Part shown: piece by piece, positions 3,213 through 63,145 of the stretch | How positions within the stretch are numbered: position 1 is the stretch's first letter | How the letters are laid out: each line of letters starts with the position of its first letter | Source: Obrimoposthia wandeli | Taxonomy: Eukaryota | Length of the DNA: 64,000 bases | NCBI GenBank assembly: GCA_977020255.1 | Contig: CDROCS010001674.1 | Span: 248,001-312,000 of the forward strand | Direction of reading: 5' to 3' | Notes under the pieces: model-generated | Database searches by the model: none | Seen by the model: the letters and a program-made list of their open reading frames with translations, nothing else | What the model was told of the DNA's origin: nothing | Translations under genes and position numbers: made by a program

Positions 3213-3241
3213 ATTGTCAACCTACACAATAGGCTGACAAT
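3213..3241 (-). terminator. Intrinsic terminator of the TRAP operon
   Basis: attgtcaacct...aggctgacaat hairpin with a minus-strand T-run, ~55 bp past the dctM stop. Confidence 0.7.
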
Positions 3242-3294
3242 AAACTAAACAGATATAATGGGACTCAAAAATTAAGTTGCAACAAAACCGTCAA

Positions 3295-4575: not shown

Positions 4576-4600
4576 TTAGTAAGACCTTCCATGTGATTTT

Positions 4601-5107: not shown

Positions 5108-5165
5108 AACAATCCCTTTAAATACAAAAGAGCAGATTTACTGCTCTTTTGTTAGTGTTGTGACT

Positions 5166-6188: not shown

Positions 6189-6293
6189 AAATATCCTATT
6201 TATTAATAAATAGAGAAAGCATTTTTCCCGTCACTTTCTCTATTTTATTAAGTGCATACAATTATTAACTTATATAAATGTGGAATAAAAGTT

Positions 6294-7157
6294 TTAACCG
6301 AAAATACGTTTGAAAATTTCAATGTTTTGGCGGAAACCTTGTTCAAAATCTCCATTACCAGGATGATAAACGCCCTCATAAGAAATAACGCCATCGTAAT
6401 TATCAGCACGCAACGCATCAGCTAAAGGTTGGAATTGCGATCCAAGCTGACCTTCACCCATACGACGGACTTCAAGTGTTGCTCGTGGCGTGTCAACCTG
6501 AACATCTTTAATATGTAAATGGCCAAGGTAACCATCTTTGATTTCATCATAACCATCTGGGAATGCAACTTCATGACACCAGCAATTATTAGCTGGATCC
6601 CAAAGAACCTGAAGTGCATCTTTAGCATCTAATTCATCAATTAATCGACGTGCGGTGTAGTTGGAATTAATTATTGTGCCATTACCAGTCTCAACCACCA
6701 GCTTCAAACCTTCCGAACGAATAAGCTCAACAGCTGGAGCAATCAACGGAGGCATTGCATCCCAGGCTCCATTTGCAACATTCCATTTTTCGGCGCCATT
6801 TCGACCCCATAAAATTTGTTCTTTCTTAGGGGACATAATACGAACAAGCGGTGATTCAAGTTCATGCGCCATTTCAATAACACGCTTAAGAGCATCCATG
6901 TGTTTAGTATGCAATTCATCACCAGGGCGATTAGCACTTGTCATACCAGCAAATATATGGCGAGAAAGGCAAGATACGGGCTTACCATGATGCTGAAGTA
7001 GAGCTTTCATCTCAGCAATTTCGCCTTTAGTATGGTCCCCTACTTCTTTGTCACCAACAAATTGAAGTTCTGCATATTTAATGTCGAACTCGTTCATTAC
7101 CTTCACTGTATGGTCAAGGTTGCGGCTAACACCATCACAGATGATACCTAGTTTCAT
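6294..7157 (-). CDS. Sugar phosphate isomerase/epimerase (xylose-isomerase-like TIM barrel)
   Basis: Metal-ligand motifs 'VVET', 'WDPAN', 'HLHIKD', 'ISYE'. Confidence 0.8.
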   Translation of the reverse strand: MKLGIICDGVSRNLDHTVKVMNEFDIKYAELQFVGDKEVGDHTKGEIAEMKALLQHHGKPVSCLSRHIFAGMTSANRPGDELHTKHMDALKRVIEMAHELESPLVRIMSPKKEQILWGRNGAEKWNVANGAWDAMPPLIAPAVELIRSEGLKLVVETGNGTIINSNYTARRLIDELDAKDALQVLWDPANNCWCHEVAFPDGYDEIKDGYLGHLHIKDVQVDTPRATLEVRRMGEGQLGSQFQPLADALRADNYDGVISYEGVYHPGNGDFEQGFRQNIEIFKRIFG

Positions 7158-7206
7158 AATTTAAATTCCTTTTATTTATATACCGTTATAAGAGTAAGAG
7201 TAAAAC

Positions 7207-8097
7207 CTAGCGATGTAATTCAGCACCTGCGATTTCTTCTAGAACGCGAGTAACAACCCAATTATCGCCTTGAGGGTATTTCGTTTTACCAGCATGGAAA
7301 AGTTGCATTGCAGTTGAAGCTGTAAATAGTGGCACACCAAGATCTTGTGCCATATCAAGAGAAATAGTTAAATCTTTATGCATAGTAGTAATTGAACTAC
7401 CAGTACCTTCAAATTTACGGTCGATTATGTTTTTCAGAGCGGTATTTGACACACCACAACCAGCCCCCGATGTTGAGAACACCTTATACAATGCTTCACC
7501 AGACACACCTGCTTTTGCTGCTAACACAGAGGCCTCAAAAGTTGCAGCGAAAATAGATCCAATTAAAGACTGCAAACAAGATTTAACAACCTGACCGTCA
7601 CCGACATTTTCACCAACATGATGAATAGTAGAAGAGACGGCATCCATGACATCTTTAAAATCACTCAATACAGACGCTGGCGCCGATGCCATCATTGTTA
7701 ACGTTCCTGCTTGAGCCCCTGGGAAGCCCCCACTTACAGGAGTATCAATTAATGAAATTTGGTAATCTTGTAGTTGTTCACCAATTTCTCGAGCTTCCTT
7801 TGGCTTGATAGTAGCCGTAAGAAGAATTGCAGAGCCTGGTGATAAATTTTTGGCAAGACCGTTGTCACCAAAAATAACTGATTTAGCTTGATCGCCATTC
7901 ATAACCATTACATACACAGCGTCAACCTTGCTTGCTAATTCAGCAATGCTTGTTGCAGGTTGACCACCCATAGCAATAAATGCGCTCATACGTTCTGAAC
8001 TGAGATCAAGACCGATTGTTTCAAAGCCATTCTTTAGGAGGTTTTTTGCTAGACCACTGCCCATATCCCCTAAACCGATAACGCCTACATGTTTCAT
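7207..8097 (-). CDS. NAD(P)-dependent beta-hydroxyacid dehydrogenase (3-hydroxyisobutyrate/threonate dehydrogenase family)
   Basis: GVIGLGDMG Rossmann motif, 'DTPVSGG', catalytic Lys in 'VVKSC', 'HKDL'. Confidence 0.88.
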   Translation of the reverse strand: MKHVGVIGLGDMGSGLAKNLLKNGFETIGLDLSSERMSAFIAMGGQPATSIAELASKVDAVYVMVMNGDQAKSVIFGDNGLAKNLSPGSAILLTATIKPKEAREIGEQLQDYQISLIDTPVSGGFPGAQAGTLTMMASAPASVLSDFKDVMDAVSSTIHHVGENVGDGQVVKSCLQSLIGSIFAATFEASVLAAKAGVSGEALYKVFSTSGAGCGVSNTALKNIIDRKFEGTGSSITTMHKDLTISLDMAQDLGVPLFTASTAMQLFHAGKTKYPQGDNWVVTRVLEEIAGAELHR

Positions 8098-47183: not shown

Positions 47184-47981
47184 TCAATTTTTAAGGCTAC
47201 ATCTGCCGCCTTTTATGTAGCGAATATTGCGATATTCAGCGGTGATAGGCACACTGTTTTGATCAAACTCGCCAGCCCATCCCGATATTTCACTGTCTGT
47301 TGCCCATATATTCGCCATTATTCGTAATGGGCTATCTGTACTTGTTGGCGTAGGATCTGATGATGTATTCTTAACTTTGAATACAAGTTTTCCATCAATA
47401 AACCATTGAATCGCACGTTTAGTCCATTTAATACCATAACGGTGGAATTCTTCAGAGGCATCAAAATCTAAGAAAATGAGCCTTGCATGGTCATTGCTGT
47501 AATTATCATCGTTTGTCCAATAGTTAATTTGTAGCAGGTTGGTATTGTCACCTAAAAATTCGATATCGATTTCATTATGTTTACCATTACTTGCCTCCGT
47601 TTTATCGTACGGACCTGCAAATAAGAAAAAGGAGGTAATCACACCATCTGCCGCGGCGGGCTTTATTTCGGCTTCAAAGCATCCGTAGTTATAAAAATCA
47701 TGGCTACGTAATTCCCCTGATTGAAAAGTAAGATTTTGCGGATCTGTTGAATCTGGCGTATTAGAAAGTGTAATTGCCATTCCGTTTGTTGAAAAAGAAA
47801 CAGCTTCAGATTCCCAGCGATTAATAAAAGGAAAACCATTACTCCAGCCATCAGCTAGCCACCATAACTGCTCATTCATATTCGTTAGCGGATCATCAAA
47901 GCTAGTTGCTGAAAATGACGGTGTAGCCACTAAAAGAGCGATAAATAAAGGCATTGTGCGAAATGAAGAAGAGGTGGTCAT
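47184..47981 (-). CDS. Secreted GH16 beta-glucanase (licheninase/ExoK-like)
   Basis: Signal peptide ending SFS-A, intact EIDIEF catalytic motif, 'GVITSFF', 'FHRYGIKW', 'IMANIW'; start chosen at MTTSSS (ORF track gives 48062). Confidence 0.9.
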   Translation of the reverse strand: MTTSSSFRTMPLFIALLVATPSFSATSFDDPLTNMNEQLWWLADGWSNGFPFINRWESEAVSFSTNGMAITLSNTPDSTDPQNLTFQSGELRSHDFYNYGCFEAEIKPAAADGVITSFFLFAGPYDKTEASNGKHNEIDIEFLGDNTNLLQINYWTNDDNYSNDHARLIFLDFDASEEFHRYGIKWTKRAIQWFIDGKLVFKVKNTSSDPTPTSTDSPLRIMANIWATDSEISGWAGEFDQNSVPITAEYRNIRYIKGGRCSLKN

Positions 47982-48104
47982 AGAGTCATACTTTTTAATG
48001 AGTGAAGTACAAAAGTGTAGCAGTGAGATTAAACGATGAAGGTTGAACTGTGTGCCAAACATAAGACAAAAATGTATTAAATGGTATTTATCTGAGAATG
48101 AAGA

Positions 48105-49550
48105 CTAGTTAGTTGTCGTGGGGGTTAAAATAGCCTTATTTCCCCGGGCTTTGTACCAAAGTGACACTAAAATCAAAGAATTTGTATTGATGTTGTACGA
48201 TGCATTCGGTGCGTTATTTTTATAAACACCAGCAGGAATAACACGAGAACTTCGACTGTTCTCAATAACCGCTTGCCTTAAAATATCACTAAACGCATCG
48301 TCAAAAATAACGCTCAGACCAAATGCAATTTTATTGCTAAATACTTGTGGGTTTTCGATGGGTTTACCACCAGCAGAGGTGCTTAGCCAGCTTTTGCCAT
48401 AGAAATAGATATTGTTATAAGCAAACCATGGGCTTTTACTTATCGCATCTTCAGCGAAGATCCATAATTTTCCTGATTGACTATATTGTTGTATATGCAA
48501 TTGATAAATAACGTTTAGTTGATTCCACCATGCTGTACTTTCACCGAGTTCAATTGCTTGCAATACATAGGGGTCTGTGGTGAAAAAAGGGACATTACGG
48601 GTGTCGATATATAATGGGATATTATCGACATTGACGATATCGATGTGATCGCGAGCAAAGCTGTTCGTTACATCTAACCCCGCTAACTGATATCCCTGCG
48701 CTGCGTATTGTAAATAGCCTAATCGCCCTTCCTGACGGTAAAACTCATCATTCTTTTGATACCGCGTACCATAAAGCGTTTTTTCGTGCACAGCGCGAGA
48801 CAGTAACCAACGTTTGGTTATTATATTCACCTGTTTTTGAAAGTGTGGTTTTTGTTGTGTTGTTATTTCAAGCCAGATGAGCAGCCGACCAATATCAAGT
48901 GCCGACCATCCGTTGCCATTTCTATTATTTTTTTTACCCGAAGGTAGCCCCGTTTCTGTGTTGTATTCACGGTTAGGTAGCTGGTCATTATAAAGTGGCA
49001 TTGTTGTTAGGGTGGTTAAAATACGGTTTAGTTTAGCATCTGCCTGTACGGTGGTGATCAGTTCGAGTGCTTCTAGTGCAAGGGTAGCACCGATGTCGCT
49101 GCCAATATCCCACATGGTGGTATGATGATAGCCTTGGACTGAATCAGTTAACCCCGTTTGTTTATTTTCATTTCGTTTAAAATAATAACTCGCCTTTTTA
49201 GCAAGTAGCCATTCTTGCCGTGATATTTTGTCGAGAGACAATACTATCTCAGTGCTTACTTTTGATGAGTCCAATGTACGAAAAAGAGAATTCTCACTCA
49301 TATCTAGTCGATTGTTTTTCGATTGGACGTCGTTTTCAATGAGAATAGCAGGAGCAATAGCGCGTCTTTGGAACGTAATTTTTTCTGGTGGTTGTTGGTT
49401 ATTTTGTTGAGATACACTTCGTCCGCCATAGAAACTGGGTTGTTCAGGTTCTTTGCTCTCTTCATTGCTATAGGCGAAAAAACTCATAACAAACAATAAG
49501 CTTGTAACATAAGTACGGCATATTGTTCGTTGTGTTTTATGGCATAGCAT
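48105..49550 (-). CDS. DUF3131-domain secreted protein (putative beta-glucan-active (alpha/alpha)6 enzyme)
   Basis: Signal peptide ending AYS-N; 'YF..N....TGL..SV.GY...TMWDIGS', 'LPNREY', 'GWSALDIGRLL', 'EGRLGY'. Confidence 0.8.
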   Translation of the reverse strand: MLCHKTQRTICRTYVTSLLFVMSFFAYSNEESKEPEQPSFYGGRSVSQQNNQQPPEKITFQRRAIAPAILIENDVQSKNNRLDMSENSLFRTLDSSKVSTEIVLSLDKISRQEWLLAKKASYYFKRNENKQTGLTDSVQGYHHTTMWDIGSDIGATLALEALELITTVQADAKLNRILTTLTTMPLYNDQLPNREYNTETGLPSGKKNNRNGNGWSALDIGRLLIWLEITTQQKPHFQKQVNIITKRWLLSRAVHEKTLYGTRYQKNDEFYRQEGRLGYLQYAAQGYQLAGLDVTNSFARDHIDIVNVDNIPLYIDTRNVPFFTTDPYVLQAIELGESTAWWNQLNVIYQLHIQQYSQSGKLWIFAEDAISKSPWFAYNNIYFYGKSWLSTSAGGKPIENPQVFSNKIAFGLSVIFDDAFSDILRQAVIENSRSSRVIPAGVYKNNAPNASYNINTNSLILVSLWYKARGNKAILTPTTTN

Positions 49551-50589: not shown

Positions 50590-52413
50590 ATGGAGCAAGG
50601 GATTTTGCTAGTTGATAAATTGAAGCAGGCGTTTACCGCGAGTAAGAAAGATATCGCTTTTGTCGGGCTATTTAGCTTGGCCATTAACTTTCTTGTTTTA
50701 ACACTACCACTTTACAGCCTGCAATTATTTGATCGTGTGTTAAGCAGTTCAAGTTTAGATACATTGTTTGCTTTACTCACCATTGCTGTTGTATTGCTAA
50801 CAGCACAAGCCATTATTGAGCATCTTCGTACACAGTTACTTCAAAAATCGGGTTTAAAGCTCGATGTATCACTCAGCCCTTCTTTATTAGCAGATAGTAT
50901 TCGTCAATCATCTAAGCAAAATCGTATAAGTAAGCAAGGTTTACAAGATCTTGCTGAGTTACGTAACTTTTTAGTCTCACCTTCAACCTCTGCCATTTTT
51001 GATATCCCATGGATTCCGATTTTTTTAATCATCCTATTTATGCTTCATCCTTATATTGGTGCAATAGCATTAGTTGGCAGTATTATATTTTCTGTTCTCG
51101 CTATTCTAATGATGTATGCGGCAAGAAAGCCGAGTGAGTATTCTAAAAGTTTAGGTATGAAAACTAATATGGAGTTGAATGATTACCTACGAAATGCCCC
51201 TACATTAAGGGCGATGGGTATGGCTGATAGCATTGGTTTGATTTGGAATAAGCGCAACAGAGAGCTGTTAAAACTGCAGTGGTTAGTCAATTCAAGAACA
51301 GGGCAATTGCTCGCCATTAGTCGTTATTTTAGAACGCTACTGCAAGTGGTTATTCTAACTGTGGGGGTAATGTTAGCGTTAGAACAGCAGCTTGGTACGG
51401 GCGCTATCATTGCGAGTTCCATTATTATGGCAAGAGTATTATCACCCTTTGAGCAAGCTGTTGCGGGTTGGAAATCATGGTATAGCGCGTATTTAGCTTA
51501 TAAACGCTTAAGTCATTATGAAGGCGAAGTGTCGAGTGAAATGAAAACAGCATTACCAGAGCCCAAAGGTGAGTTGCTGCTAAAGAATGTTGGTCTGCGG
51601 TTTGATAGCCAAAAAGAACCAGTACTACAAAATATTAGCTTCAAATTGGGTGCGGGTAATGCGTTGGCTATTATGGGTAACAGTGGCTCGGGTAAATCAA
51701 CATTAGCATCGATGATTATGGGGATTCATCGACCGTCGATGGGATCAATCAAGATCGATGGCGCGGCAATTGAGCTATGGCCTGAAGAACAGTTTGGTCG
51801 CCATATCGGTTTTTTACCGCAAGAGGTGGGGTTACTAACGGGTACGGTAGCTGAGAATATTTGTCGATTTAGTCAGGCTCCAGCAGAGAAAATCATTCAC
51901 GCTGCTCGCCTAGCTTGTATTCACGAACTGATCATATCTTTACCTAATGGGTATGACACTTATTTAGGCGAAGGTGGATTACAGCTATCGGGTGGTCAGA
52001 AGCAACGCATCGGTTTAGCGCGGGCTATTTTCTCAAACCCAAGCTTACTTATTTTAGATGAACCGAATTCTAATTTGGATCCTGAAGGGGAAGTCGCATT
52101 AGCGATTGTTCTTCAATACTGCAAAGAGAATGCAATTACAGTGGTGATGATTAGCCATCGCCCTGGTTTTTTACGTCAAATGGATTGGGTTATTGTATTA
52201 AAAGACGGCAAAATTGAAAAAGCGGGCACATGCGATAAGTTCTTAGGCGCAATGTCTGAAGTAGAAAAAGAGCCGTTACAAACCGTCGCTAATAATAACC
52301 CTAAAACCACTAATTCAAATTGTTCTACTCCTAGAGCATCAAGCTCTGAGCAATCATCATTAAAAAAGACAGTAGCCAAACAAGCAGAAGCAATGGGAGA
52401 TAACCGTGGATGA
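50590..52413 (+). CDS. Type I secretion ABC transporter, PrtD/AprD type (no C39 domain)
   Basis: 'LYSLQLFDRVLSS.S..TL', Walker A GNSGSGKST, 'LSGGQKQRIGLARA', 'LDEPNSNLD'. Confidence 0.93.
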   Translation: MEQGILLVDKLKQAFTASKKDIAFVGLFSLAINFLVLTLPLYSLQLFDRVLSSSSLDTLFALLTIAVVLLTAQAIIEHLRTQLLQKSGLKLDVSLSPSLLADSIRQSSKQNRISKQGLQDLAELRNFLVSPSTSAIFDIPWIPIFLIILFMLHPYIGAIALVGSIIFSVLAILMMYAARKPSEYSKSLGMKTNMELNDYLRNAPTLRAMGMADSIGLIWNKRNRELLKLQWLVNSRTGQLLAISRYFRTLLQVVILTVGVMLALEQQLGTGAIIASSIIMARVLSPFEQAVAGWKSWYSAYLAYKRLSHYEGEVSSEMKTALPEPKGELLLKNVGLRFDSQKEPVLQNISFKLGAGNALAIMGNSGSGKSTLASMIMGIHRPSMGSIKIDGAAIELWPEEQFGRHIGFLPQEVGLLTGTVAENICRFSQAPAEKIIHAARLACIHELIISLPNGYDTYLGEGGLQLSGGQKQRIGLARAIFSNPSLLILDEPNSNLDPEGEVALAIVLQYCKENAITVVMISHRPGFLRQMDWVIVLKDGKIEKAGTCDKFLGAMSEVEKEPLQTVANNNPKTTNSNCSTPRASSSEQSSLKKTVAKQAEAMGDNRG

Positions 52414-53704
52414 ATCAGAATTTGATACGAATCGATTAATCTGGGTTGGGTGTATTTTCATTCTTCTCACTGTGGGTGGCTTTATTTTATGGGCAACAAC
52501 CGCAAAGCTTAGTTCTGCGTCGGTTGCTTCTGGTACGTTAGTCGTGGAGTCACAGCGTAAGAAGGTACAACACCTTGAAGGTGGTTGGGTAAAAGCGATT
52601 TATGTGTCGGAAGGTCAAAAAGTGGAAGTGGGCGATGTATTAGTCGAACTTGCAAACAGTCGAGCTGAATCCGATTTTCGGCGCTTAATATTACGTGCTG
52701 TTTCTCTGCAAGCACAACACGACCGATTATCGACTGAATTGAGTAACCGAAAAGATCTTGTATGGAGTAATCTTTTTTTTGATGAAATTGAAGAAGGGCA
52801 GTTGGCCAATATTATTAATAGCCAACAGCTACAATATCAACAGTCTGTGCTTCATGAAGAGCTTCGAGAAGGCCAATATCAACAACGAAAAGTGCTATTA
52901 CAAGAACAAATCAGAGGGACGGGTTTTCAGCTTAGTGCGATTCAACGTCAGTTAGATTTGGCTAACGAAGAAATACAGATGACGACAAGTTTACTTAAAA
53001 AAGGCTTTGTTTCAAAAACACGGGTACTTCAAATTAAACGCTATCATGCGGGTATTGATGCTCAAAAAGCAGAACTAAAAGGCGAAAGTGAAGTATTAGC
53101 TCAACAGCTATTGTCTTTAGAACAAGATTACAAGTCTGAGAGTATTGAATTTAAACAGGGTCTTACCGCTCAAATTGAACAATCAGAAAAAGAGCTGCGT
53201 GATGTTAAGCAAGCGCTTAAATCGGCAAGAGATGTGCGTGAAAGAGTCAAAATTCGCAGTGAACATACTGGAACTGTGGTTGGATTAAACATTCATAGTA
53301 TCGGGGGTGTGGTTAATGCGGGTGATGTCATTATGGAAATAGTACCAGATAGCGATGCATTGATCGTTGAAGCTGTGGTTAAACCAGAAGACATTGATGT
53401 GGTCCGCCAAGGCTTGGCAGCAAAAGTACGATTGAGTGCTTACAATATCCGCCGTACGCCACCCGTTCAAGGTGAAGTCATTTATGTTGCAGCAGACAGA
53501 CTTCAACCTCGAACAGATAATAGCCCTACAGGTTATGTAGTCAAAATTAAGCTAGATCCAAATGAAATTAAGATGTTAGATAATATCGAACTGTACCCAG
53601 GCATGCCTACTGAAGTGTTTATTTTATTAGAAGATAAAACACTATGGGATTATTTAACGGCACCATTATTTAGTTCTTATTATCGAGCATTTAGAGAGTC
53701 ATGA
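52406..53704 (+). CDS. Type I secretion membrane-fusion protein (HlyD/PrtE family)
   Basis: 'VQHLEGGWV', long coiled coil, 'LYPGMPTEV'; 8-bp overlap with the ABC gene. Confidence 0.93.
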   Translation: MDESEFDTNRLIWVGCIFILLTVGGFILWATTAKLSSASVASGTLVVESQRKKVQHLEGGWVKAIYVSEGQKVEVGDVLVELANSRAESDFRRLILRAVSLQAQHDRLSTELSNRKDLVWSNLFFDEIEEGQLANIINSQQLQYQQSVLHEELREGQYQQRKVLLQEQIRGTGFQLSAIQRQLDLANEEIQMTTSLLKKGFVSKTRVLQIKRYHAGIDAQKAELKGESEVLAQQLLSLEQDYKSESIEFKQGLTAQIEQSEKELRDVKQALKSARDVRERVKIRSEHTGTVVGLNIHSIGGVVNAGDVIMEIVPDSDALIVEAVVKPEDIDVVRQGLAAKVRLSAYNIRRTPPVQGEVIYVAADRLQPRTDNSPTGYVVKIKLDPNEIKMLDNIELYPGMPTEVFILLEDKTLWDYLTAPLFSSYYRAFRES

Positions 53705-54124: not shown

Positions 54125-57100
54125 TTAGCTTATTTCTGAACCATTAAAGTTAATCTTGTCGGTGTCACTATCACTCCAGATCGTGACTTCGTTCCCATCA
54201 CCATTACTGAACGTGTAACCAAATAATCCATCAGTATCAATATTACTGGCTTCGTAGGCCTCACGAAGCTCATTGGATAAGTCGGCGTTGTTATCTGATA
54301 GCTCCCAACCAAACCCTTCAAGTTGCAGTGAGTCTGCTCCTGAGCACACGAATTGTCCGTTGGTTGCACTGTCGGTTTCGTTTAACAGTACTTTATCTAA
54401 AGCAACTTTCAGCTGAGCATCATTAGCATTAACTACAACCCCTTCAATTTGTTGGAGTGCAGATTGCGTCATGTCAATAATTTGCCCATTGTTGTCGCTA
54501 CCAACCGCTAATAGGTCGAACCCATCACCGCCATTAATATTGGTGTCATTCTTATCGAAGATTAATGTATCGTTACCGCTGCCCGCAAATAATTGGTCAA
54601 TGCCAGCACCACCATCCAGTACATCATCACCGCTTTGACCAAAGAGTAAATCATCGCCTGAATCACCATGAAGGGTATCGTTACCGATGCCGCCATCAAG
54701 GCTATCGTCATTGTCTCCGCCAGCGAGTGTGTCGTTATCACCACCGCCTGATAATGTATCGTCACCACTACCACCGGTTAATGAGTCATTCCCAGAACCG
54801 CCGTACAAGGTATCTGCTCCAGTATCTCCAGATAGAGAATCGCTCCCTGTTTCACCATAAAGAACATCATCACCGGAACCACCTTTTAAGGTGTCATTTC
54901 CTTCGCCAGCCCATAAGGTATCATTACCAGAATCACCTTTAAGCGTATCGTTACCAATATCACCTTTTAAGATATCGTTACCTGAACCGCCTGAAAGGAT
55001 GTCATTACCAGCTCCGCCATCCAGCTGATCGTCATTATTTTGGCCGTAGAGCTTGTCATCACCGTCGTCGCCAGTAAGTACATCGTTACCGCTACCACCG
55101 TATAACTTGTCGTTGTCAGCACCACCTGAAAGCGTATCATCACCAGATCCCGCGCTCAGTGTATCAGCACCTTCACCGCCAGATAATAAGTCTGAACCTG
55201 AACCCGATGTGAGTTTATCGTTGCCTTCGCCACCGTCTAACGTGTTGTTACCATCGCCAGCAAAAAGTGTGTCAGAGCCTAACCCTCCAACAAGAATATC
55301 ATTCCCTTTACCTGCGGTTACTGTATCGTTGCCATCGCCGCCATCTAAGGTATTGTCACCAGAATCGGCATTGAGTATGTCGTTACCCTCACCACCACTT
55401 AAGCGGTCATTTCCTGACCCTGCTGTTAGAGTATCATCGCCATCACCGCCTTCGAGGGTGTCATTACCGTCGAAGCCTTCTAGTCGGTCATTACCTGCAT
55501 CACCCCGCAGAATATCATCAGCAGCAGCTCCGTAAAGCACATCGTTATCGTCGCCACCTTCAAGGGTGTTGTTACCACTATTTGCATGTAATTCATCGTT
55601 GCCAGCACCGCCTAATAGTGTGTCATCACCTTCACCAGCAAAGAGTTTGTCTGCACCGTCACCACCCAGTAATCGGTCGTTACCGTCGCCGCCCAGCAGA
55701 ACGTCGTCGCCTAATTCACCTGAAAGTGTATCGTTGCCTGCTCCTCCTTCGATGGTATCGATACCTGCGCCACCAGAAAGGTTATCATTGCCTTCTGCAC
55801 CGCTTAGTTTGTCTGAACCAGAACCCGCAATAACGGTATCATTGCCACTGCCACCATAAAGGGTGTTATCACCTTCCCCAAGGTCAATGGTGTTATTACC
55901 TGCTTCACCATAGACGGTGTCATTGCCGTCGCCAGCAATAATTGTATCGTTACCTGCACCTGCATAGAGGGCATCATCGCCAGCGCCACCTTGAATTGTA
56001 TCTTGGTCTGCGCCGCCGTATAACGTATCGTTTTGGCTGCTACCGATTAATGTATCATCACCCGCGCCACCAAATATCTGATGGCTCCCTGTTGCCGCTG
56101 CGATTAGCGTATCATCACCGCCTTCACCAAGAAGGGTGTCTTGGCCATCATCAGTAATCGTATCGTTACCATCACCGCCAGCTAAGAAGTCGTACCCATC
56201 ACCACCGATTAATGTATCATCGCCAGCACCACCAAATAATGCATCGTTGCCATCGCCACCATCGAGTAAATCGCTGCCTGAACCTGCATCGATATGATCA
56301 TCGCCAAGCCCTGCGGTAATTGTGTCATCGCCGTCGCCGGCAAATATCTGGTCGTTGCCATCGCCAGCATCAATGGTATCGCTGTTAATACCACCATAAA
56401 TGTTATCAGCACCTGATCCTGCGGTGATTTGGTTGCTACCCGCTTCGCCATAAATTGTGTCGTCGCCATCACCCGCATTAATAACATCATTACCGCTACC
56501 AGCGTAAATGGTGTCATTACCTGCGTTCGACGTAATTGTATCATTGCCTGAACCACCGCCAAGAATGTCAGCTTCGTCGGCACTCACAAGAGTATCGTTA
56601 CCAGCATCACCGTAAAGCTGGCTAATACCTAAGTCGCCATCAAGGCTGTCATTACCATCACCACCTGCGAGAAGGTCATCTCCTTGTCCGCCGAGTAAGG
56701 TATCATTACCAACACCTCCGACTAAGATGTCATTACCATCACCGCCCTCTAAGCTATCGTCACCAGAACCGCCAAGTAAGGTATCAGCTCCTTCAGCGCC
56801 TTGCAGGTTGTCATCACCGCTATGACCTTCGAGTAAATCATCACCTTGACCTGCGAGTAAGGTATCGTTATCGGCACCGCCGTAAAGGGCATCGTTTTCG
56901 TTAGACCCAGTTAAAGTATCCTCACCTTGACCGCCGAAGAGTGAACTGCTGTTTGTACCTGCGTTAATGGTGTCGTTGCCGTTTTCGCCATAAAGCGCGT
57001 TATTACCTTGCTCACCATGAATAATATCGTCACCAGCGCCAGCATAAACGGTATCGACACCGTCACCAGCGTAGATTGTATCTATACCTGCTCCGGCGAA

Positions 57101-58852
57101 TACTTCATCGTTGCCTGTACCAGCTTGAATTAAATCATTGCCGCTGCCGGTGAATACATCATCATCACCAATGCCTGACGTGATTGTATTGTCACCATCA
57201 CCTGCATAAATCACATCATGCCCATCACCAGCATCAATGGTGTCGTTACCTTCGGCACTGTAAATCGTGTCGTTATCTGTGCCGGTATTTATGGTGTTAT
57301 TACCCGCACCTGCAAAAACGGTATCGTGTCCTGCGCCGGTATTGATTGTGTCGTTACCGGTATCGGTATAAACCGTATCGTCGCCATCATCCGCGGTTAC
57401 AGTGTTATTGCCGGTTTCACCATAAATGGTATCGTTACCTGTGCCGCCATCAATAAAGTCATCACCTTCACCTGCATAGATGAAATCATCACCCGCGCCT
57501 GCATTTATAATGTCATTGCCTTCATTAGCATGAAGGATATCGGAGCCGTCACCACCCTCTAATACATCATTGCCTGCGCCACCAAAGAGTTGGTCACTAT
57601 CAGCGCCCCCGACAAGTTGGTCGTTGCCTAGGCCGCCATAAACCATATCGGCACCAGCCCCACCCGTAATGATATCGTCACCAGCTTCTCCAAACAGGTT
57701 ATCGTTACCATCACCACCTGATAGATTGTCGTTACCATCACCACCGAGTAGCAAATCATTGTCTGCGCCGCCTTCAATAATATCAGCGCCATCACCGCCT
57801 AAAATGAAATCGTCACCAGCACCACCAGTGATGATATCGTCACCAGCGTCACCATGAATTTCATCTTTTCCTTCGCCACCAGATAAAGTGTCAATGCCTA
57901 AGCCACCGAATAAACTGTCGTTACCAGTGCCACCTGTAAGGGTGTCATTGCCATCATCACCGAGTAATATGTCGTTACCTGCACCACCATCGATAATATC
58001 GTCGCCCAACTCACCTAAAAGGGTGTCATCACCATCGTCACCGAATAATGTATCGTTTCCATCGCTACCTAAGAGGGTATCGTTATCAGAACCGCCATAA
58101 AGGGTATCGTCACCGTTACCACCTACGAGTACATCGTCGCCTTCATCGCCATAAAGAGTATCGTTGTTGATATCTCCGTCGATAAAGTCATTCCCCGTAC
58201 CACCGTAAATAGTATCTGAACCTTGTTGTCCAAATAGGCTATCGTTACCCGCTCCACCTGAAATTGTGTCGTTGTAGATGTTATTCGCGATAAATTCTAC
58301 TGATTCTATATCGGTAATATCTTTTCCATCGGGACCAACAAGTGTGAATGAAATTAGCTGTTCAGCACCGACTTCATCAGCAGTAAAAGCGATATCAACA
58401 ATAACATCACCATTTTCATCAATTGTCGCAGGTATCGTTTTTATAACGTTACCATCTTGGTCTGTTAACTCGACGGTGATTGCCGTGAATGCGGTATTAA
58501 CTGAAAATTTTGTTGTTATTGATCCTGATTGATCAACGACATAGTTACCTAAGCGAGCACTGTGAGAAATTTGTTCTTGTTCATCATCAGAAGAAGCGGT
58601 GTATTTATAAACAGTTTGTGCATCTCCCCAGTTGTCATTCGTTGCCGGTTTTGCTGGAGGTTCTGTACCATACTCAACATCCCCTAAAATGGTATCTGAA
58701 CCATCACCACCAGATAACAGATCACTACCTTCACCACCGACTACAAAATCATCTCCAGCTTTTGCATCGACTTCATCATTACCAGATCGCGTATTGATGT
58801 TATCGTCTTGAGTTGTCCCGTCCACTTTGTCGTTGAATTTCGTTCCTTCCAT
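54125..58852 (-). CDS. Giant RTX-repeat Ca2+-binding protein (1575 aa), probable T1SS substrate
   Basis: No Sec signal; ~6 N-terminal nonapeptides, a ~135-aa unique domain, ~137 contiguous GGxGxDxLx repeats, and a C-terminal non-repeat secretion domain; GAGG RBS. Confidence 0.93.
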   Translation of the reverse strand: MEGTKFNDKVDGTTQDDNINTRSGNDEVDAKAGDDFVVGGEGSDLLSGGDGSDTILGDVEYGTEPPAKPATNDNWGDAQTVYKYTASSDDEQEQISHSARLGNYVVDQSGSITTKFSVNTAFTAITVELTDQDGNVIKTIPATIDENGDVIVDIAFTADEVGAEQLISFTLVGPDGKDITDIESVEFIANNIYNDTISGGAGNDSLFGQQGSDTIYGGTGNDFIDGDINNDTLYGDEGDDVLVGGNGDDTLYGGSDNDTLLGSDGNDTLFGDDGDDTLLGELGDDIIDGGAGNDILLGDDGNDTLTGGTGNDSLFGGLGIDTLSGGEGKDEIHGDAGDDIITGGAGDDFILGGDGADIIEGGADNDLLLGGDGNDNLSGGDGNDNLFGEAGDDIITGGAGADMVYGGLGNDQLVGGADSDQLFGGAGNDVLEGGDGSDILHANEGNDIINAGAGDDFIYAGEGDDFIDGGTGNDTIYGETGNNTVTADDGDDTVYTDTGNDTINTGAGHDTVFAGAGNNTINTGTDNDTIYSAEGNDTIDAGDGHDVIYAGDGDNTITSGIGDDDVFTGSGNDLIQAGTGNDEVFAGAGIDTIYAGDGVDTVYAGAGDDIIHGEQGNNALYGENGNDTINAGTNSSSLFGGQGEDTLTGSNENDALYGGADNDTLLAGQGDDLLEGHSGDDNLQGAEGADTLLGGSGDDSLEGGDGNDILVGGVGNDTLLGGQGDDLLAGGDGNDSLDGDLGISQLYGDAGNDTLVSADEADILGGGSGNDTITSNAGNDTIYAGSGNDVINAGDGDDTIYGEAGSNQITAGSGADNIYGGINSDTIDAGDGNDQIFAGDGDDTITAGLGDDHIDAGSGSDLLDGGDGNDALFGGAGDDTLIGGDGYDFLAGGDGNDTITDDGQDTLLGEGGDDTLIAAATGSHQIFGGAGDDTLIGSSQNDTLYGGADQDTIQGGAGDDALYAGAGNDTIIAGDGNDTVYGEAGNNTIDLGEGDNTLYGGSGNDTVIAGSGSDKLSGAEGNDNLSGGAGIDTIEGGAGNDTLSGELGDDVLLGGDGNDRLLGGDGADKLFAGEGDDTLLGGAGNDELHANSGNNTLEGGDDNDVLYGAAADDILRGDAGNDRLEGFDGNDTLEGGDGDDTLTAGSGNDRLSGGEGNDILNADSGDNTLDGGDGNDTVTAGKGNDILVGGLGSDTLFAGDGNNTLDGGEGNDKLTSGSGSDLLSGGEGADTLSAGSGDDTLSGGADNDKLYGGSGNDVLTGDDGDDKLYGQNNDDQLDGGAGNDILSGGSGNDILKGDIGNDTLKGDSGNDTLWAGEGNDTLKGGSGDDVLYGETGSDSLSGDTGADTLYGGSGNDSLTGGSGDDTLSGGGDNDTLAGGDNDDSLDGGIGNDTLHGDSGDDLLFGQSGDDVLDGGAGIDQLFAGSGNDTLIFDKNDTNINGGDGFDLLAVGSDNNGQIIDMTQSALQQIEGVVVNANDAQLKVALDKVLLNETDSATNGQFVCSGADSLQLEGFGWELSDNNADLSNELREAYEASNIDTDGLFGYTFSNGDGNEVTIWSDSDTDKINFNGSEIS
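54560..58258 (-). repeat. 27-bp-period RTX nonapeptide array (~137 units, residues 199-1431)
   Basis: Parsed by hand; the span equals 137 x 27 bp exactly, with one 8-residue unit compensated by one 10-residue unit. Confidence 0.9.
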
Positions 58853-59211: not shown

Positions 59212-60204
59212 TCAGAAGGTAAAAGAGTATGAAATAGAGAACGCACCATCTATAAATCGGCCTGTATCTTCTCCTCGATCTGATGAATTCCAGCGGTTAC
59301 CTGAGTAGTTATTATATTGGATGGTAATTGTGCCAGGGTGCCAATCGAAGTAACCAAATCCATAGGTGAAATCAGGATTCCAAGGCTGCTTTTGGCTGCT
59401 ATCAAAATAATAAAATGCAGTCGCATTGACATACCAATTGCCGAATATTGAATACTTACAGCCTAAACTCAGGGTTTTGTGGCCTTGTTTATAGGTTGAT
59501 GATGCAAGATCGAAGTATTCAGGGGTGAAGTTAAAATCTGTTTGACAGCCTATGGCTCCTTCCTCAGTAAAAGACAGCCAATCAATAAACGGTTTAGTAA
59601 TAGGAAACTTCCAACCCAAAGACCATGTACCCTGATCAAAGTTCGTGACGGGTTGCTCTTCTGTTGCTTTAAAGCGATTACCGCCGTAGTTGGCATACAT
59701 CAAGCTGAAGGTATAAGGACGCCAATCACTGTAGCCAAAAACATAGGTGAAATCAGGGTTCCACGCTTGTTGCTGATCACCGTCTATGTAGTAGTACAGT
59801 GTACTTGCGACAAACCAATTTCCTAATATTGTGTATTTTAACGATAACGTCGCGGTTGCGTTATTGTTAGTCGGCCCAGTCGTAGCATTGGCGGGCAGGT
59901 TAGCTGCAGATGTTTGAAGCATAGGATAACCAAGCGCAAAATTACCGCTTAAACCGTGTAACCATGAACGGTCTTCATTATCGTCATCCCATTCTTCAAA
60001 TGGCAAATCAAAAGAACTGGATACACCTTTCCAAATTAAATCGGATTCAGCTGGCTTAGGCTCTTCATCCAAGCTAATTGCTTTTGTAAAGTTGGGTGAT
60101 ATCGGTTTGGGGGCTTGTTTAGCCGTTTCAGCCATATACTCACTCGATACCGCAATAGATGAACATAGCAAACAGGGAAAATATAGAAATAATAATTTAT
60201 GCAT
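59212..60204 (-). CDS. Predicted outer-membrane beta-barrel protein with an internal 57-aa duplication
   Basis: Signal peptide, aromatic amphipathic strands, C-terminal FSISYSFTF (BAM-type terminal Phe), two copies of 'WNPDFTY.FGY.DW.P'. Confidence 0.75.
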   Translation of the reverse strand: MHKLLFLYFPCLLCSSIAVSSEYMAETAKQAPKPISPNFTKAISLDEEPKPAESDLIWKGVSSSFDLPFEEWDDDNEDRSWLHGLSGNFALGYPMLQTSAANLPANATTGPTNNNATATLSLKYTILGNWFVASTLYYYIDGDQQQAWNPDFTYVFGYSDWRPYTFSLMYANYGGNRFKATEEQPVTNFDQGTWSLGWKFPITKPFIDWLSFTEEGAIGCQTDFNFTPEYFDLASSTYKQGHKTLSLGCKYSIFGNWYVNATAFYYFDSSQKQPWNPDFTYGFGYFDWHPGTITIQYNNYSGNRWNSSDRGEDTGRFIDGAFSISYSFTF

Positions 60205-61996: not shown

Positions 61997-63145
61997 ATGA
62001 AAGGGATGATTCTGGCTGCGGGCAAAGGGACGCGAGTAAAGCCAATAACACAGACGATACCTAAACCAATGATTCCAATTCTCGGAAAGCCAGTGATGGA
62101 ATCAATGATCCAACTCTTTGCCGCGCACGGTATAGATCAAATTGTTGTAAATACCAGCCATCTGGCTGAAGTTATAGAAAACTACTTTAGTGATGGGCAT
62201 CATTTTAATGTTCAGCTTTCTTATTCCTACGAAGGGGAAATGAAAGGCGGTAAATTTATCAGTAAAGCATTAGGTTCTGCTGGTGGAATGAAAAAAATTC
62301 AAGATTTTTCCGGTTTCTTTGATGAAACATTTGTTGTTGTATGTGGTGATGCTTGGATCGATCTTGATCTCACTGAGGCGGTAAGACGTCACAAAGAGTT
62401 AGGTGGTATTGCAACGATTATTTCGAAAGAAGTTGAATTAAGTGAAGTCAGTAAATATGGCGTAGTTGTTACCGACGATAACGGTAGAATTACTTCTTTT
62501 CAAGAAAAGCCAAGTGCTGAAGAAGCCCTGTCGACACAGATTAACAGCGGTATTTATATTTTCGAGCCTGCAATTTTTGATTTTATTCCAAAGGAAGAAG
62601 AATTCGATATTGGTAGCCAGTTATTCCCATTATTGGTTGAGAAAGATATCACCTTCTATGCGACTAAGATGGATTTCCAGTGGTTAGATGTTGGTAATAT
62701 CAGTGATATTTGGGGTGTTACCAGCGAAATATTACATGGTAAAGTGCCGGGCTATCCTGTTCCTGGCACCCAAGTTAAACCTGGCGTGTGGGTGGGTATC
62801 AATACGGTATTTGATCTCGACAAATGTAATATTACCCCTCCTGTCATTATCAGTAGCGGTTGCGAAATTCAAAATGGTGCGACAATTACTGGTCCTGCCT
62901 TAATAGGTTCAAACTGTAAAATTGAATCTGAAGCGGTGATCAGCCAAAGCATAGTGTGTGACTATATCCATATCTCTGGTTCTGCTTATATTGATAATAA
63001 AACTGTTTTTGGTGATTACTTCATTAGTCATGATGGTTTTACTCAATCTTTAATTGAAATGGATGCCATTCATATACTGAAAGATAGGCGTGTAACGCAA
63101 TCTGTAGTCGTGAACAGAACAAACGTTCCAGCGTTTACACCTTAA
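61997..63145 (+). CDS. NDP-sugar pyrophosphorylase, CugP-like (non-GalU UDP-glucose pyrophosphorylase), with C-terminal left-handed beta-helix
   Basis: 'ILAAGKGTRVKPIT.TIPKPMIPIL', 'SYSYEG', 'KALGSAGGMKKIQDFSGFFDETFVVVCGDA.IDLDL', 'FQEKP'; matches cyanobacterial CugP as I recall it. Confidence 0.8.
   Translation: MKGMILAAGKGTRVKPITQTIPKPMIPILGKPVMESMIQLFAAHGIDQIVVNTSHLAEVIENYFSDGHHFNVQLSYSYEGEMKGGKFISKALGSAGGMKKIQDFSGFFDETFVVVCGDAWIDLDLTEAVRRHKELGGIATIISKEVELSEVSKYGVVVTDDNGRITSFQEKPSAEEALSTQINSGIYIFEPAIFDFIPKEEEFDIGSQLFPLLVEKDITFYATKMDFQWLDVGNISDIWGVTSEILHGKVPGYPVPGTQVKPGVWVGINTVFDLDKCNITPPVIISSGCEIQNGATITGPALIGSNCKIESEAVISQSIVCDYIHISGSAYIDNKTVFGDYFISHDGFTQSLIEMDAIHILKDRRVTQSVVVNRTNVPAFTP

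What the first reader, a model, noticed from the sequence alone, without database searches (positions are those of the whole stretch)
55046..57934. One-sided aromatic ladder hidden in the RTX array: a possible glucan-binding or self-assembly face
SEEN (hand count, repeat 1 = GGAGNDSLF): between repeats 13 and 119, position 9 is F/Y/H in 35 odd-numbered repeats but only 2 even-numbered ones. Repeats 21-51 give 16 consecutive odd repeats with an aromatic residue. The single 8-residue unit (79) is offset by a 10-residue unit (81), keeping the register. The phase flips to even repeats at both ends (2-8 and 124-136). KNOWN: in RTX beta-rolls, positions 7 and 9 point outward and alternate repeats stack on the same sheet; exposed aromatic rows are typical carbohydrate-stacking surfaces. 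INFERENCE: selection maintains a long aromatic track on one face that could bind the polysaccharide made by the neighbouring genes or drive lateral filament pairing.
Basis: partly seen in the sequence, partly recalled or inferred. Interest (0 to 1): 0.75.

Follow-up and report, generated by a model that had tools for sequence, protein, structure and literature searches.

The report
Conserved one-sided aromatic ladder on RTX rod
A secreted, calcium-binding rod protein of a Photobacterium-like marine bacterium carries a single row of about 35 stacked Tyr/Phe/His side chains along one side; the row is conserved in relatives from four genera, the protein occurs only in genomes that also have an unstudied sugar-polymer gene cluster, and what the row does is still untested.

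Summary
In repeats 13-119, position 9 is F/Y/W/H in 35 odd and 2 even repeats. Sixteen consecutive odd repeats (21-51) are aromatic, and the phase flips at both ends (permutation P<1e-5).

It is not a generic RTX property. Of 119 unrelated long RTX arrays, only one reaches a comparable bias.

It is under selection:
- 26 orthologues (Photobacterium, Aliivibrio, Vibrio, Shewanella; 46-72% identity) keep the same pattern.
- Odd position 9 is as conserved as the buried core residue (0.86 bits). The neighbouring outward row (2.06 bits) and the opposite face (2.04 bits) vary freely.
- Array length varies from 57 to 83 turns, always by whole 18-residue turns. The DNA shows no 54-bp bias that would explain this.

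AlphaFold2 gives one continuous beta-roll (pLDDT 97.8).

The gene sits with its own type I secretion system inside a GT2/DUF3131/GH16 glucan cluster. The RTX family was found only in genomes that carry DUF3131 (35/35 Vibrionaceae, 15/15 Shewanellaceae).

The function is inferred, not shown. The likeliest role is a calcium-triggered stacking seam for lateral association in a protein-glucan matrix, as with CabA. A classical sugar-stacking platform is less likely: the row is single-file, spaced 4.8 Å, and almost free of Trp.

Earlier scan notes cover the glucan cluster on other DNA but not this ladder.

The parts
54125..58852 (-). RTX protein gene, 1575 aa, 155.9 kDa, computed pI 4.05, 279 Asp
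   Evidence: ORF list and translation; PF00353 E=3.2e-290 with 55 stretches; composition
58682..58852 (-). N-terminal mini beta-roll, aa 1-57 (six short strands)
   Evidence: AF2 model of aa 1-225, DSSP strands every 9 residues; PF00353 hit at aa 32-58
58277..58627 (-). Inserted jelly-roll beta-sandwich domain, aa ~76-192, with CBM-like/Ig-like matches
   Evidence: AF2 shows eight long strands, pLDDT ~85-92. VIA-align gives Z 6.5-8 to many CBMs (CBM4, 15, 22, 35, alginate- and porphyran-binding modules, MLG SGBP-B), FlgD and PGP3, which is below the level that proves kinship. Weak FlgD_ig Pfam hit. No sequence homologues in the length-restricted protein search.
54560..58258 (-). Uninterrupted array of 137 nonapeptide units (aa 199-1431), about 68 beta-roll turns
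   Evidence: Segmentation; Asp at position 6 is 96% identical between the two orthologues in this assembly
55046..57934 (-). Central ladder, units 13-119: aromatic position 9 on 35 odd vs 2 even units (the finding)
56882..57718 (-). Longest unbroken run: 16 consecutive rungs, units 21-51 (aa 379-657)
   Evidence: Columns 23-45 are 100% aromatic in 21 homologues. AF2 of aa 361-675 gives pLDDT 97.8, pTM 0.91 and one continuous beta-roll; the ladder-side strands of units 25-41 are longer than three residues (4-5). Foldseek top hits are CyaA RTX blocks (rmsd 2.0 Å over 87 columns to 5cxl) and the Ca-dependent beta-helix 3p4g.
58043..58231 (-). N-end block with aromatics on the opposite sheet (units 2, 4, 6, 8)
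   Evidence: columns 81-95% aromatic across the family
54587..54937 (-). C-end block with aromatics on the opposite sheet (units 124, 126, 128, 134, 136)
   Evidence: columns 95-100% aromatic across the family
56072..56179 (-). Compensating 8-residue and 10-residue units (units 78-81) that keep the 18-residue register
   Evidence: the same pair is called in many homologues
54128..54559 (-). Family-specific C-terminal domain (aa 1432-1575), presumed cap plus secretion signal
   Evidence: 66% identical in the C506 orthologue. Only 4 short fragments among 1.84 billion representatives. 26 genomic loci found. No Pfam or PDB match.
50590..52413 (+). Type I secretion ABC transporter, PrtD type
   Evidence: TIGR01842 612 bits, cut-off 510; conserved next to the RTX gene in Vibrionaceae
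52406..53704 (+). Type I secretion HlyD-family adaptor
   Evidence: TIGR01843 339 bits, cut-off 209; synteny
59212..60204 (-). Conserved 330-aa gene just upstream of the RTX gene on the same strand, with weak OMPLA-like similarity
   Evidence: PF02253 E=5.9e-6, just below cut-off; 61-83% identical and syntenic in all Vibrionaceae loci
48105..49550 (-). DUF3131 protein, one of the paralogues of the glucan cluster
   Evidence: PF11329 E=1.3e-91; syntenic in Photobacterium, Aliivibrio and Vibrio
47184..48062 (-). GH16 beta-glucanase-like gene
   Evidence: PF00722 E=3.9e-35; BglS/ExoK-like but below cut-offs
61997..63145 (+). Sugar-1-phosphate nucleotidyltransferase (precursor supply). A BcsA-like GT2 and a second DUF3131 follow just beyond the window end (L034).
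   Evidence: PF00483 E=5e-55; GT2 616 aa with CelA 207 bits, below cut-off, and DUF3131 E=2.6e-143 in L034

Best explanation
The gene encodes a type-I-secreted, calcium-folded beta-roll rod of about 68 turns, roughly 33 nm long. Over its central ~100 repeats, every second repeat puts a Tyr, Phe or His at position 9. Two repeats make one turn, so these residues line up in single file on the outer surface of one of the two sheets, one rung per 4.8 Å, where they must stack on each other. Shown here: the row exists, it is family-specific, and it is held by purifying selection as tightly as the hydrophobic core. The register between the row and both termini is also preserved through at least 12 length changes. 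The protein is an accessory of a GT2/DUF3131 beta-glucan gene cluster. Inferred: once calcium folds the rod outside the cell, the stacked row forms a hydrophobic seam on an otherwise very acidic rod. This seam stiffens the rod and, above all, serves as a lateral docking line. The most likely partners are other copies of the rod, so that rods pair or bundle into a calcium-dependent scaffold that works together with the co-encoded glucan. The opposite-face aromatic blocks at the two ends probably pack against the N-terminal sandwich and the C-terminal cap, or contact neighbouring rods.
For: The ladder is real and non-random. It is conserved in the second orthologue in this assembly at 67.5% identity: 33 odd vs 2 even, 40 of 48 rungs kept, and the window's two even exceptions are Ser there. 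It is conserved in 26 loci from four genera. Summed over the family, the central region has 906 aromatics on the ladder face against 75 on the other. In ladder columns Y is 426, F 328 and H 93, against L 14, V 7 and I 5. Entropy at odd position 9 is 0.86 bits, comparable to the core at 0.57-0.82, while odd position 7 is 2.06 and even position 9 is 2.04. The pattern is not generic: 119 unrelated long arrays have median z 0.74 against a family median of 5.3, with one outlier. Array lengths are 57-83 whole turns and never an odd multiple of 9 aa. Same-phase and opposite-phase units are equally similar in DNA, 52.8 vs 52.4%, and shared 14-mers fall at even lag 26 times and odd lag 18 times. AF2 gives a continuous beta-roll with pLDDT 97.8 and strands at positions 7-9, and the fold matches RTX blocks. 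Published geometry: the X residues of XUX point outward (PMC6891781). A beta-roll face engineered to be hydrophobic dimerises and gels only with calcium (PMC5618222). A single-file tyrosine ladder is the proposed dimer seam of ice-nucleation solenoids (PMC10727499). CabA of V. vulnificus is an RTX-motif protein with its own T1SS inside an EPS locus; it multimerises with calcium and builds matrix only when EPS is present (PMC4584020). Genome context and nesting in DUF3131 genomes.
Against: There is no direct evidence of oligomerisation. A protein-protein interface usually constrains neighbouring surface positions as well, yet the adjacent outward row is free. The rung pattern along the rod is not palindromic, so an antiparallel dimer would leave gaps facing rungs. 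Fifteen of the 65 genomes carrying the DUF3131 cluster lack an intact RTX gene, so the protein is dispensable for the cluster. In most Shewanella genomes the RTX gene is far from the cluster.
Confidence: 0.45

Rival explanations
1. The ladder is a purely intramolecular stabiliser. The stacked aromatic row zips successive turns and sets the stiffness or folding rate of an unusually long, uncapped stretch of beta-roll, and it contacts nothing else.
For: Only one row is constrained and Y and F interchange freely. Unrelated RTX arrays show a mild general excess of same-face aromatic pairs, ratio 1.42 at lag 18 against 1.0 at lag 9. Designers placed Trp pairs at i and i+18 to stabilise minimal beta-rolls (PMC2174480).
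Against: Stability alone does not explain why one sheet is used and the other avoided (lag-1 pairs 6 vs 16.5 expected). It does not explain why 118 of 119 other long arrays manage without such a ladder. It does not explain why the face relation to both termini is preserved through all length changes, or why certain rungs are invariably His (units 27 and 99, 19/21 each).
Confidence: 0.28
2. The ladder is a glucan-binding track. The aromatic row binds the beta-glucan made by the neighbouring GT2/DUF3131 genes along the rod.
For: The RTX family occurs only in genomes with the DUF3131 cluster: 35 of 35 RTX-positive genomes among 201 Vibrionaceae, and 15 of 15 among 151 Shewanellaceae; no DUF3131-negative genome has it. 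In Vibrionaceae the gene sits inside the cluster. Beta-solenoids often bind polysaccharides lengthwise, for example AlgE R-modules, which appear among the fold and sequence hits.
Against: Co-occurrence shows a shared pathway, not a binding site. The adjacent polar row is unconstrained. The 4.8 Å spacing forces ring-on-ring stacking, so ring faces are largely occupied (inference). Trp is almost absent, 6 of about 924. The N-terminal jelly-roll resembles CBMs and is a more ordinary candidate.
Confidence: 0.17
3. The ladder is a historical by-product. The alternation merely records an ancestral 18-residue duplication unit and is not selected.
For: One unrelated protein (P0053) has a near-perfect 18-residue super-repeat that looks recently duplicated.
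Against: Here the units are only about 53% identical in DNA, with no phase signal. The rungs are nevertheless kept at core-like conservation across four genera while flanking positions drift.
Confidence: 0.03

Closest known systems
CabA/CabBC of Vibrio vulnificus (PMC4584020)
   Same: Both are Vibrionaceae proteins with RTX-motif calcium-binding repeats. Both are encoded with their own type I secretion genes inside an exopolysaccharide locus. CabA multimerises with calcium and builds matrix only when the EPS is present.
   Different: As I recall, CabA is small with few motifs. This protein has 137 units, a different EPS system (GT2/DUF3131 rather than brp) and family-specific terminal domains. 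No aromatic ladder has been described for CabA. Homology beyond the repeats was not tested.
ExpE1 with ExpD1/ExpD2 in the Sinorhizobium meliloti galactoglucan cluster (PMC1403797, citing Moreira et al. 2000)
   Same: A secreted calcium-binding repeat protein and a PrtD/PrtE-type T1SS are encoded within an EPS biosynthesis cluster and are needed for EPS production or secretion.
   Different: The organism, polymer and protein size are all different. No ladder is known. The requirement for polymer production was not tested here.
Tyrosine ladder of bacterial ice-nucleation protein solenoids (PMC10727499, PMC3196904)
   Same: It is a single-file, strictly conserved aromatic residue at one fixed position of each coil of a very long beta-solenoid. 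It is proposed as the seam along which two solenoids pair.
   Different: INPs have a 16-residue coil without calcium, the ladder is Tyr only, and they are outer-membrane anchored proteins. Here the turn is 18 residues and calcium-bound, the ladder is a Tyr/Phe/His mix, and the protein is secreted by a T1SS.
Engineered hydrophobic-face beta-rolls (Leu and DLeu beta-roll of CyaA block V; PMC5618222) and designed Trp-pair beta-rolls (PMC2174480)
   Same: Outward residues of alternate repeats on one sheet were made hydrophobic. The face forms only on calcium binding and then drives dimerisation or gelation. Trp at i and i+18 was used as a stacking pair.
   Different: Those are man-made, use both outward rows (eight Leu) and span about four turns. 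This is natural, uses one row only, is aromatic and runs for dozens of turns.
Classical RTX cytolysins and serralysin-type RTX enzymes (HlyA, CyaA, AprA)
   Same: They share the nonapeptide beta-roll, the T1SS and the acidic character. CyaA RTX blocks are the best sequence and fold matches.
   Different: This protein has no pore-forming or catalytic domain, and no acyltransferase gene was seen beside it. Solved blocks have ten repeats or fewer and carry aromatics on both faces. This array is continuous and one-sided.

Membership tests
RTX calcium-binding beta-roll proteins (PF00353) | Tandem GGxGxDxUx nonapeptides | tested here: met
   PF00353 E=3.2e-290 with 55 stretches; 137 units parsed
RTX calcium-binding beta-roll proteins (PF00353) | Parallel beta-roll fold with strands at XUX | tested here: met
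   AF2 pLDDT 97.8 with strands at positions 7-9 of all 35 units modelled; Foldseek hits to CyaA RTX blocks. This is a prediction, not a solved structure.
Type I secretion substrates | Dedicated ABC transporter and membrane-fusion protein encoded nearby | tested here: met
   TIGR01842 (612 > 510 bits) and TIGR01843 (339 > 209 bits) lie adjacent and are syntenic in relatives
Type I secretion substrates | Uncleaved C-terminal secretion signal; actual secretion | not testable with these tools
   A conserved 144-aa C-terminal domain is present but no signal model or experiment is available
RTX pore-forming toxins (HlyA/CyaA type) | Hydrophobic pore-forming domain, acylation sites and an RtxC-type acyltransferase | tested here: not met
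   PF00353 is the only Pfam family for the whole protein. NF033943 scores 636 bits against a cut-off of 1000, and only over repeats. None of the neighbouring ORFs scanned against Pfam is an acyltransferase.
EPS-locus RTX matrix proteins (CabA-like / ExpE1-like) | RTX-repeat protein plus its own T1SS embedded in, or co-inherited with, a polysaccharide synthesis cluster | tested here: met
   Synteny with GT2, DUF3131 and GH16; perfect nesting in DUF3131 genomes in two bacterial families
EPS-locus RTX matrix proteins (CabA-like / ExpE1-like) | Calcium-dependent multimerisation and EPS-dependent matrix function | not testable with these tools
   Needs biochemistry and genetics
Planar (type A-like) carbohydrate-binding aromatic platforms | Coplanar exposed aromatic rings, typically rich in Trp/Tyr and spaced about one disaccharide apart, with conserved polar partners | tested here: inconclusive
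   Rungs lie one strand apart, W <1% and F 35%, and the neighbouring outward row is unconstrained. These points argue against membership, but ring geometry could not be measured because no coordinates were available.
Solenoid aromatic-ladder pairing seams (INP type) | Single-file, conserved aromatic at one fixed position of successive coils on the solenoid exterior | tested here: met
   Exterior placement rests on published beta-roll geometry (PMC6891781).
Solenoid aromatic-ladder pairing seams (INP type) | Pairing of two solenoids along the ladder | not testable with these tools
   No multimer prediction or experiment is available

The most novel reading that the evidence does not exclude
The ladder is a natural calcium-triggered zipper. 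After secretion, the 33-nm beta-roll rods fold and then pair or bundle along their aromatic seams, with the opposite-face end blocks acting as staggered lap joints. This would form fibres or sheets that scaffold an as yet uncharacterised beta-glucan, giving a new class of RTX matrix polymer and the natural counterpart of engineered hydrophobic-face beta-roll hydrogels.
Probability: 0.2. Interest if true: 0.8.

Novelty: new variant of a known kind. Interest (0 to 1): 0.6.

Why it matters
RTX beta-roll faces are usually treated as variable, functionless surfaces that engineers are free to rewrite (PMC5618222). Here a natural family keeps one outward row as strictly as its core for dozens of turns, on one sheet only, and accepts length changes only in whole turns. 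This points to a defined functional surface on a "pure repeat" protein that has no other recognisable cargo.

The family is co-inherited with a widespread, unstudied GT2/DUF3131 glucan system in marine Vibrionaceae and Shewanella. It therefore offers a concrete handle on what that system builds outside the cell.

It also gives protein engineers a natural template for long, calcium-switchable, amphipathic rods.

If the ladder turns out to be only a stabiliser, the result is still a useful design rule for very long beta-rolls.

Tried and rejected
- A search with the N-terminal domain (aa 60-198) in the length-restricted protein database found nothing.
- The genome search 'relatives' is impossible for this assembly. 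It is a 1.35-Gb, 6912-contig assembly in which the window lies on a bacterial contig.
- The exhaustive representative search with the C-terminal domain found only four short fragments. The family was reached only through genome contigs.
- I suspected that the DUF3131 genes are the beta-1,2-glucanases characterised in Photobacterium gaetbulicola (PMC12102758). Neither DUF3131 copy matches any PDB sequence, including the solved PgSGL3 and EeSGL1. The link therefore remains unconfirmed and I do not name the polymer.
- The ESM Atlas was busy on both attempts.
Model coordinates are not exposed, so solvent exposure, ring stacking and contacts of the end blocks with the terminal domains could not be measured. 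No multimer prediction exists.
- The PDB profile search with the C-terminal domain gave nothing meaningful.
- No RNA run holds the gene, so expression was not examined and read laying was not used.
- Rejected: a recent tandem duplication as the cause.
- Rejected: the pattern as a generic RTX property.
- Rejected: toxin identity.
Full report
THE OBJECT. The finding lies inside one ORF, window 54125..58852 on the minus strand, 1575 aa. Pfam sees only RTX nonapeptide repeats (PF00353, E=3.2e-290, 55 stretches). A dynamic-programming parse gives 137 consecutive units from aa 199 to 1431, with one 8-residue and one 10-residue unit that cancel within 27 residues. The protein is 155.9 kDa, with computed pI 4.05 and 279 Asp. 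At the DNA level the repeats are old: TRF finds only short stretches at about 75% matches, and mean unit-to-unit identity is about 53%.

CHECK OF THE OBSERVATION.
- Units 13-119 have F/Y/W/H at position 9 in 35 odd and 2 even units (44 and 46).
- Units 21-51 give 16 consecutive aromatic odd units.
- The phase is reversed in units 2-8 and 124-136.
- The stated coordinates are exactly units 13-119.
Permutation of the 48 aromatic labels among the 137 units gives 16.3 +/- 2.7 same-face neighbours against 33 observed. It gives 16.5 adjacent pairs against 6 observed (P = 6e-5). The phase-run scan statistic never reached 33 in 20,000 shuffles (maximum 25).

WHERE THE WINDOW COMES FROM. The window is on contig C1674 of a 1.35-Gb, 6912-contig assembly, so it is a bacterial contig inside a much larger assembly. 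The gene content is gammaproteobacterial. The RTX protein's closest relatives are in Photobacterium kagoshimensis (72%) and P. jeanii (71%). A second, related bacterium in the same assembly (contig C506) carries a colinear orthologue at 67.5% identity. Within the repeat array the two differ by only one indel, of 36 residues, i.e. two turns.

IS THE LADDER CONSERVED? Yes, in all relatives examined.
- In the C506 orthologue the count is 33 odd against 2 even. Forty of the 48 rungs remain aromatic, and the window's two even-unit exceptions are Ser there.
- The C-terminal domain (aa 1432-1575) is rare in protein databases, with only four fragments among 1.84 billion representatives. A scan of species genomes nevertheless found 26 loci in Photobacterium (14), Aliivibrio (3), Vibrio (4) and Shewanella (5). 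Their ORFs are 1400-1892 aa, apart from one truncated copy in V. fortis.
- All intact copies show the same architecture: a short aromatic block on one sheet at the N-end, a long ladder on the other sheet, and a flip back at the C-end. Summed over the family, the central region has 906 aromatics on the ladder face and 75 on the other.
- In 21 non-redundant sequences (46-72% identical to the window protein), 44 position-9 columns are at least 70% aromatic. Of these, 35 are odd and 9 even, and all the even ones lie at the two ends.
- Those columns contain Y 426, F 328 and H 93, but only L 14, V 7, I 5 and W 6. Several rungs are nearly invariant His (units 27 and 99 at 19/21, unit 15 at 16/21).

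WHAT KIND OF CONSTRAINT IS IT? In units 21-51 the column entropy at odd position 9 is 0.86 bits. That is the same as the buried position 8 (0.57-0.82). The other outward position of the same strands (odd position 7) has 2.06 bits, and position 9 on the opposite sheet has 2.04 bits. Selection therefore holds a single file of residues, not a two-row surface patch.

A second, independent sign of selection is length variation. The array between fixed anchors is 57, 58, 59, 60, 66, 68, 70, 72, 75, 76, 79, 81 or 83 turns of 18 residues, plus 0-2 residues from isolated 10-mers. It is never an odd multiple of nine. Thirteen distinct lengths need at least 12 indel events; if parity were free, the chance of this would be about 2^-12. 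The DNA offers no mechanical reason. Same-phase and opposite-phase units are equally similar (52.8 vs 52.4%), and shared 14-mers occur at even lags 26 times and odd lags 18 times. The relation between the ladder face and both termini is therefore itself conserved.

IS IT GENERIC TO RTX ARRAYS? No. I took the 120 best-scoring long RTX proteins from many families as background.
- Their aromatic frequency at position 9 is similar (0.25 against 0.29 in the family).
- The same-face excess is mild: ratio 1.42 at lag 18 and 1.0 at lag 9, against 2.3 and 0.33 in the family.
- Their longest one-sided runs are mostly 2-4 rungs, against 13-14 in the family by the same strict criterion.
- In a per-protein permutation test the background median z is 0.74 and the family median 5.3. 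Only one background protein, P0053, is comparable at z 4.4.
P0053 is a near-perfect 18-residue super-repeat with a Tyr face and an Arg/His face. This shows that two-faced beta-rolls arise elsewhere, apparently there by recent duplication.
A paralogue in one Photobacterium genome (L035, 1968 aa, 199 units) puts about 60 aromatics on one face and none on the other.

STRUCTURE. AlphaFold2 on aa 361-675 with the 21-sequence family alignment gives pLDDT 97.8 and pTM 0.91. The model is one unbroken beta-roll with a strand at positions 7-9 of every unit. The ladder-side strands of units 25-41 are longer than three residues (4-5), extending into the next unit. Foldseek's best matches are CyaA RTX blocks (rmsd 2.0 Å over 87 columns to block V) and the calcium-bound beta-helix of the Marinomonas antifreeze protein. 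No solved beta-roll is nearly as long.

Published structures establish that U of XUX points into the roll and the two X residues point outward (PMC6891781). They also establish that each strand contributes two exposed residues to one of two faces (PMC5618222). It follows that the rungs lie on the exterior of one sheet, 4.8 Å apart. At that spacing aromatic rings cannot lie flat side by side and must stack.

The N-terminal 225 residues fold as a six-strand mini beta-roll, a disordered loop and an eight-strand jelly-roll. The jelly-roll's best structural neighbours include many carbohydrate-binding modules, but at Z 6.5-8, which does not prove kinship.

GENOMIC CONTEXT. Convergent with the RTX gene are a PrtD-type ABC exporter and a HlyD adaptor, both above NCBIfam cut-offs. 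Upstream on the same strand lies a conserved 330-aa gene with weak OMPLA-like similarity. Further out lie a DUF3131 gene and a GH16 glucanase-like gene on one side. On the other side lie a response-regulator phosphatase, a sugar-1-phosphate nucleotidyltransferase and an anti-sigma-type kinase. Just beyond the window end come a GH2-like gene, a BcsA/CelA-like GT2 (207 bits, below cut-off) and another DUF3131. This arrangement recurs in Photobacterium, Aliivibrio and Vibrio.

Genomes with the RTX family carry four DUF3131 paralogues.
- Among 201 Vibrionaceae species genomes, 35 have an intact family member and all 35 have DUF3131. Nine further DUF3131 genomes lack an intact copy (one has a broken one), and none of the 157 DUF3131-negative genomes has it. 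Fisher's P is about 1e-31 without phylogenetic correction.
- Among 151 Shewanellaceae genomes the same nesting holds: 15 of 15, seven DUF3131 genomes without the RTX, and 129 with neither. In most of them the two loci are megabases or contigs apart.
The RTX protein is thus an accessory of this glucan system. The linkage type of the polymer is unknown. I could not confirm by sequence that these DUF3131 proteins are the beta-1,2-glucanases solved from P. gaetbulicola and Endozoicomonas. Two earlier notes from this scan on other DNA describe the same GT2/DUF3131 cluster as an unstudied glucan system.

MECHANISM. Shown: a selected, single-file aromatic row on one sheet of a continuous calcium beta-roll in a T1SS-linked accessory protein of a glucan cluster.

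Inferred, and my preferred reading (about 0.45): the row is a stacking seam that appears only when calcium folds the rod outside the cell. It stiffens the rod and provides a hydrophobic line for lateral association, most likely with other rods, in a matrix that also contains the glucan. The precedents are close.
- An engineered hydrophobic beta-roll face dimerises and gels only with calcium (PMC5618222).
- A single-file tyrosine ladder is the proposed pairing seam of ice-nucleation solenoids (PMC10727499).
- CabA of V. vulnificus, an RTX-motif protein with its own T1SS inside an EPS locus, multimerises with calcium and builds matrix only when the EPS is present (PMC4584020).
- ExpE1 with ExpD1/D2 is the rhizobial parallel (PMC1403797).

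Rivals:
- A purely internal stabiliser (0.28). This fits the single row and the free Y/F exchange, but not the strict one-sidedness, the rarity among other long arrays, the parity-preserving indels or the fixed His rungs.
- A glucan-binding track (0.17). This fits the co-inheritance. Against it are the free neighbouring polar row, the stacked geometry, the near absence of Trp and the CBM-like N-terminal domain, which is a more ordinary candidate.
- A neutral relic of 18-residue duplication (0.03). The conservation data contradict this.
The readings are not mutually exclusive.

NOVELTY AND VERDICT. The protein is a member of the RTX/T1SS substrate class and is not a toxin. It has no pore-forming or catalytic domain, no acyltransferase gene was seen nearby, and its NCBIfam toxin score is below cut-off and confined to the repeats. 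Full-text searches found no description of a natural one-sided aromatic ladder in a beta-roll. I therefore class it as a new variant of a known kind: a long RTX rod with a conserved aromatic seam, co-inherited with an uncharacterised glucan system. The proposed functions remain hypotheses, and self-association has better precedent than sugar stacking. Interest 0.6.

Noticed in passing
L001 (G000:C506:505500-514500), ORF + 2818..7809: A second, colinear orthologue (67.5% identity, one 36-aa indel within the array) lies on a 3.8-Mb contig of the same assembly. The assembly therefore holds at least two related Photobacterium-like bacteria, plus several other contigs with giant RTX ORFs of 2380 to 10635 aa open frames.
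   Followed up: partly
L035 (G125:C12:616800-623700): This is a paralogue in one Photobacterium genome: 1968 aa, 199 units, with about 60 position-9 aromatics all on one face and none on the other, including the C-terminal block. The end 'flip' is therefore not universal in the wider family.
   Followed up: partly
P0053, aa ~780-900: An unrelated 2586-aa RTX protein (source name: Sneathiella sp., Ig-like domain-containing) has a near-perfect 18-residue super-repeat. One sheet is all Tyr and the other all Arg/His/Lys. It is an independent two-faced beta-roll, apparently from recent duplication.
   Followed up: partly
window 58277-58627 (-), aa 76-192: A jelly-roll beta-sandwich is inserted between a six-strand mini beta-roll (aa 1-57) and the main array. 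Its structural neighbours include many CBMs (Z 6.5-8), which is not conclusive. It could be the real glycan- or surface-binding part.
   Followed up: partly
window units 15, 27, 99 (aa 333, 441, 1089) and family columns 4 and 51: Certain rungs are almost invariably His, usually flanked by Phe (F-H or F-H-Y). This hints at pH- or metal-dependent behaviour of the seam.
   Followed up: no
L025 (Vibrio fortis); G077:C2:94430-94803: The RTX gene is truncated (582-aa open frame) or broken into small frames in some species that keep the DUF3131 cluster. Fifteen further cluster-bearing genomes show no copy. The protein is a dispensable accessory.
   Followed up: partly
L034 (G000:C1674:311001-318485), just beyond the window end: The contig ends 6.5 kb after the window. 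This stretch holds an RsbW-like kinase, a GH2-like gene (not seen in V. fortis at the same place), a BcsA-like GT2 of 616 aa and a second DUF3131.
   Followed up: partly
window 59212-60204 (-): A 330-aa gene with weak phospholipase-A1 (OMPLA barrel) similarity always sits immediately upstream of the RTX gene, on the same strand, in Vibrionaceae. It may be an outer-membrane partner.
   Followed up: no
window units 22-50, even units: The face opposite the ladder is Thr-rich at position 7 (42-65%) and Asp/Thr/Asn/Ser at position 9, and it is variable. The rod is therefore amphipathic, with one aromatic line and one polar, acidic face.
   Followed up: partly
window 54125-58852: Near-identical DNA (shares 0.31-0.60 of sampled words) occurs in food and invertebrate-gut metagenome runs. 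No RNA run holds it.
   Followed up: no
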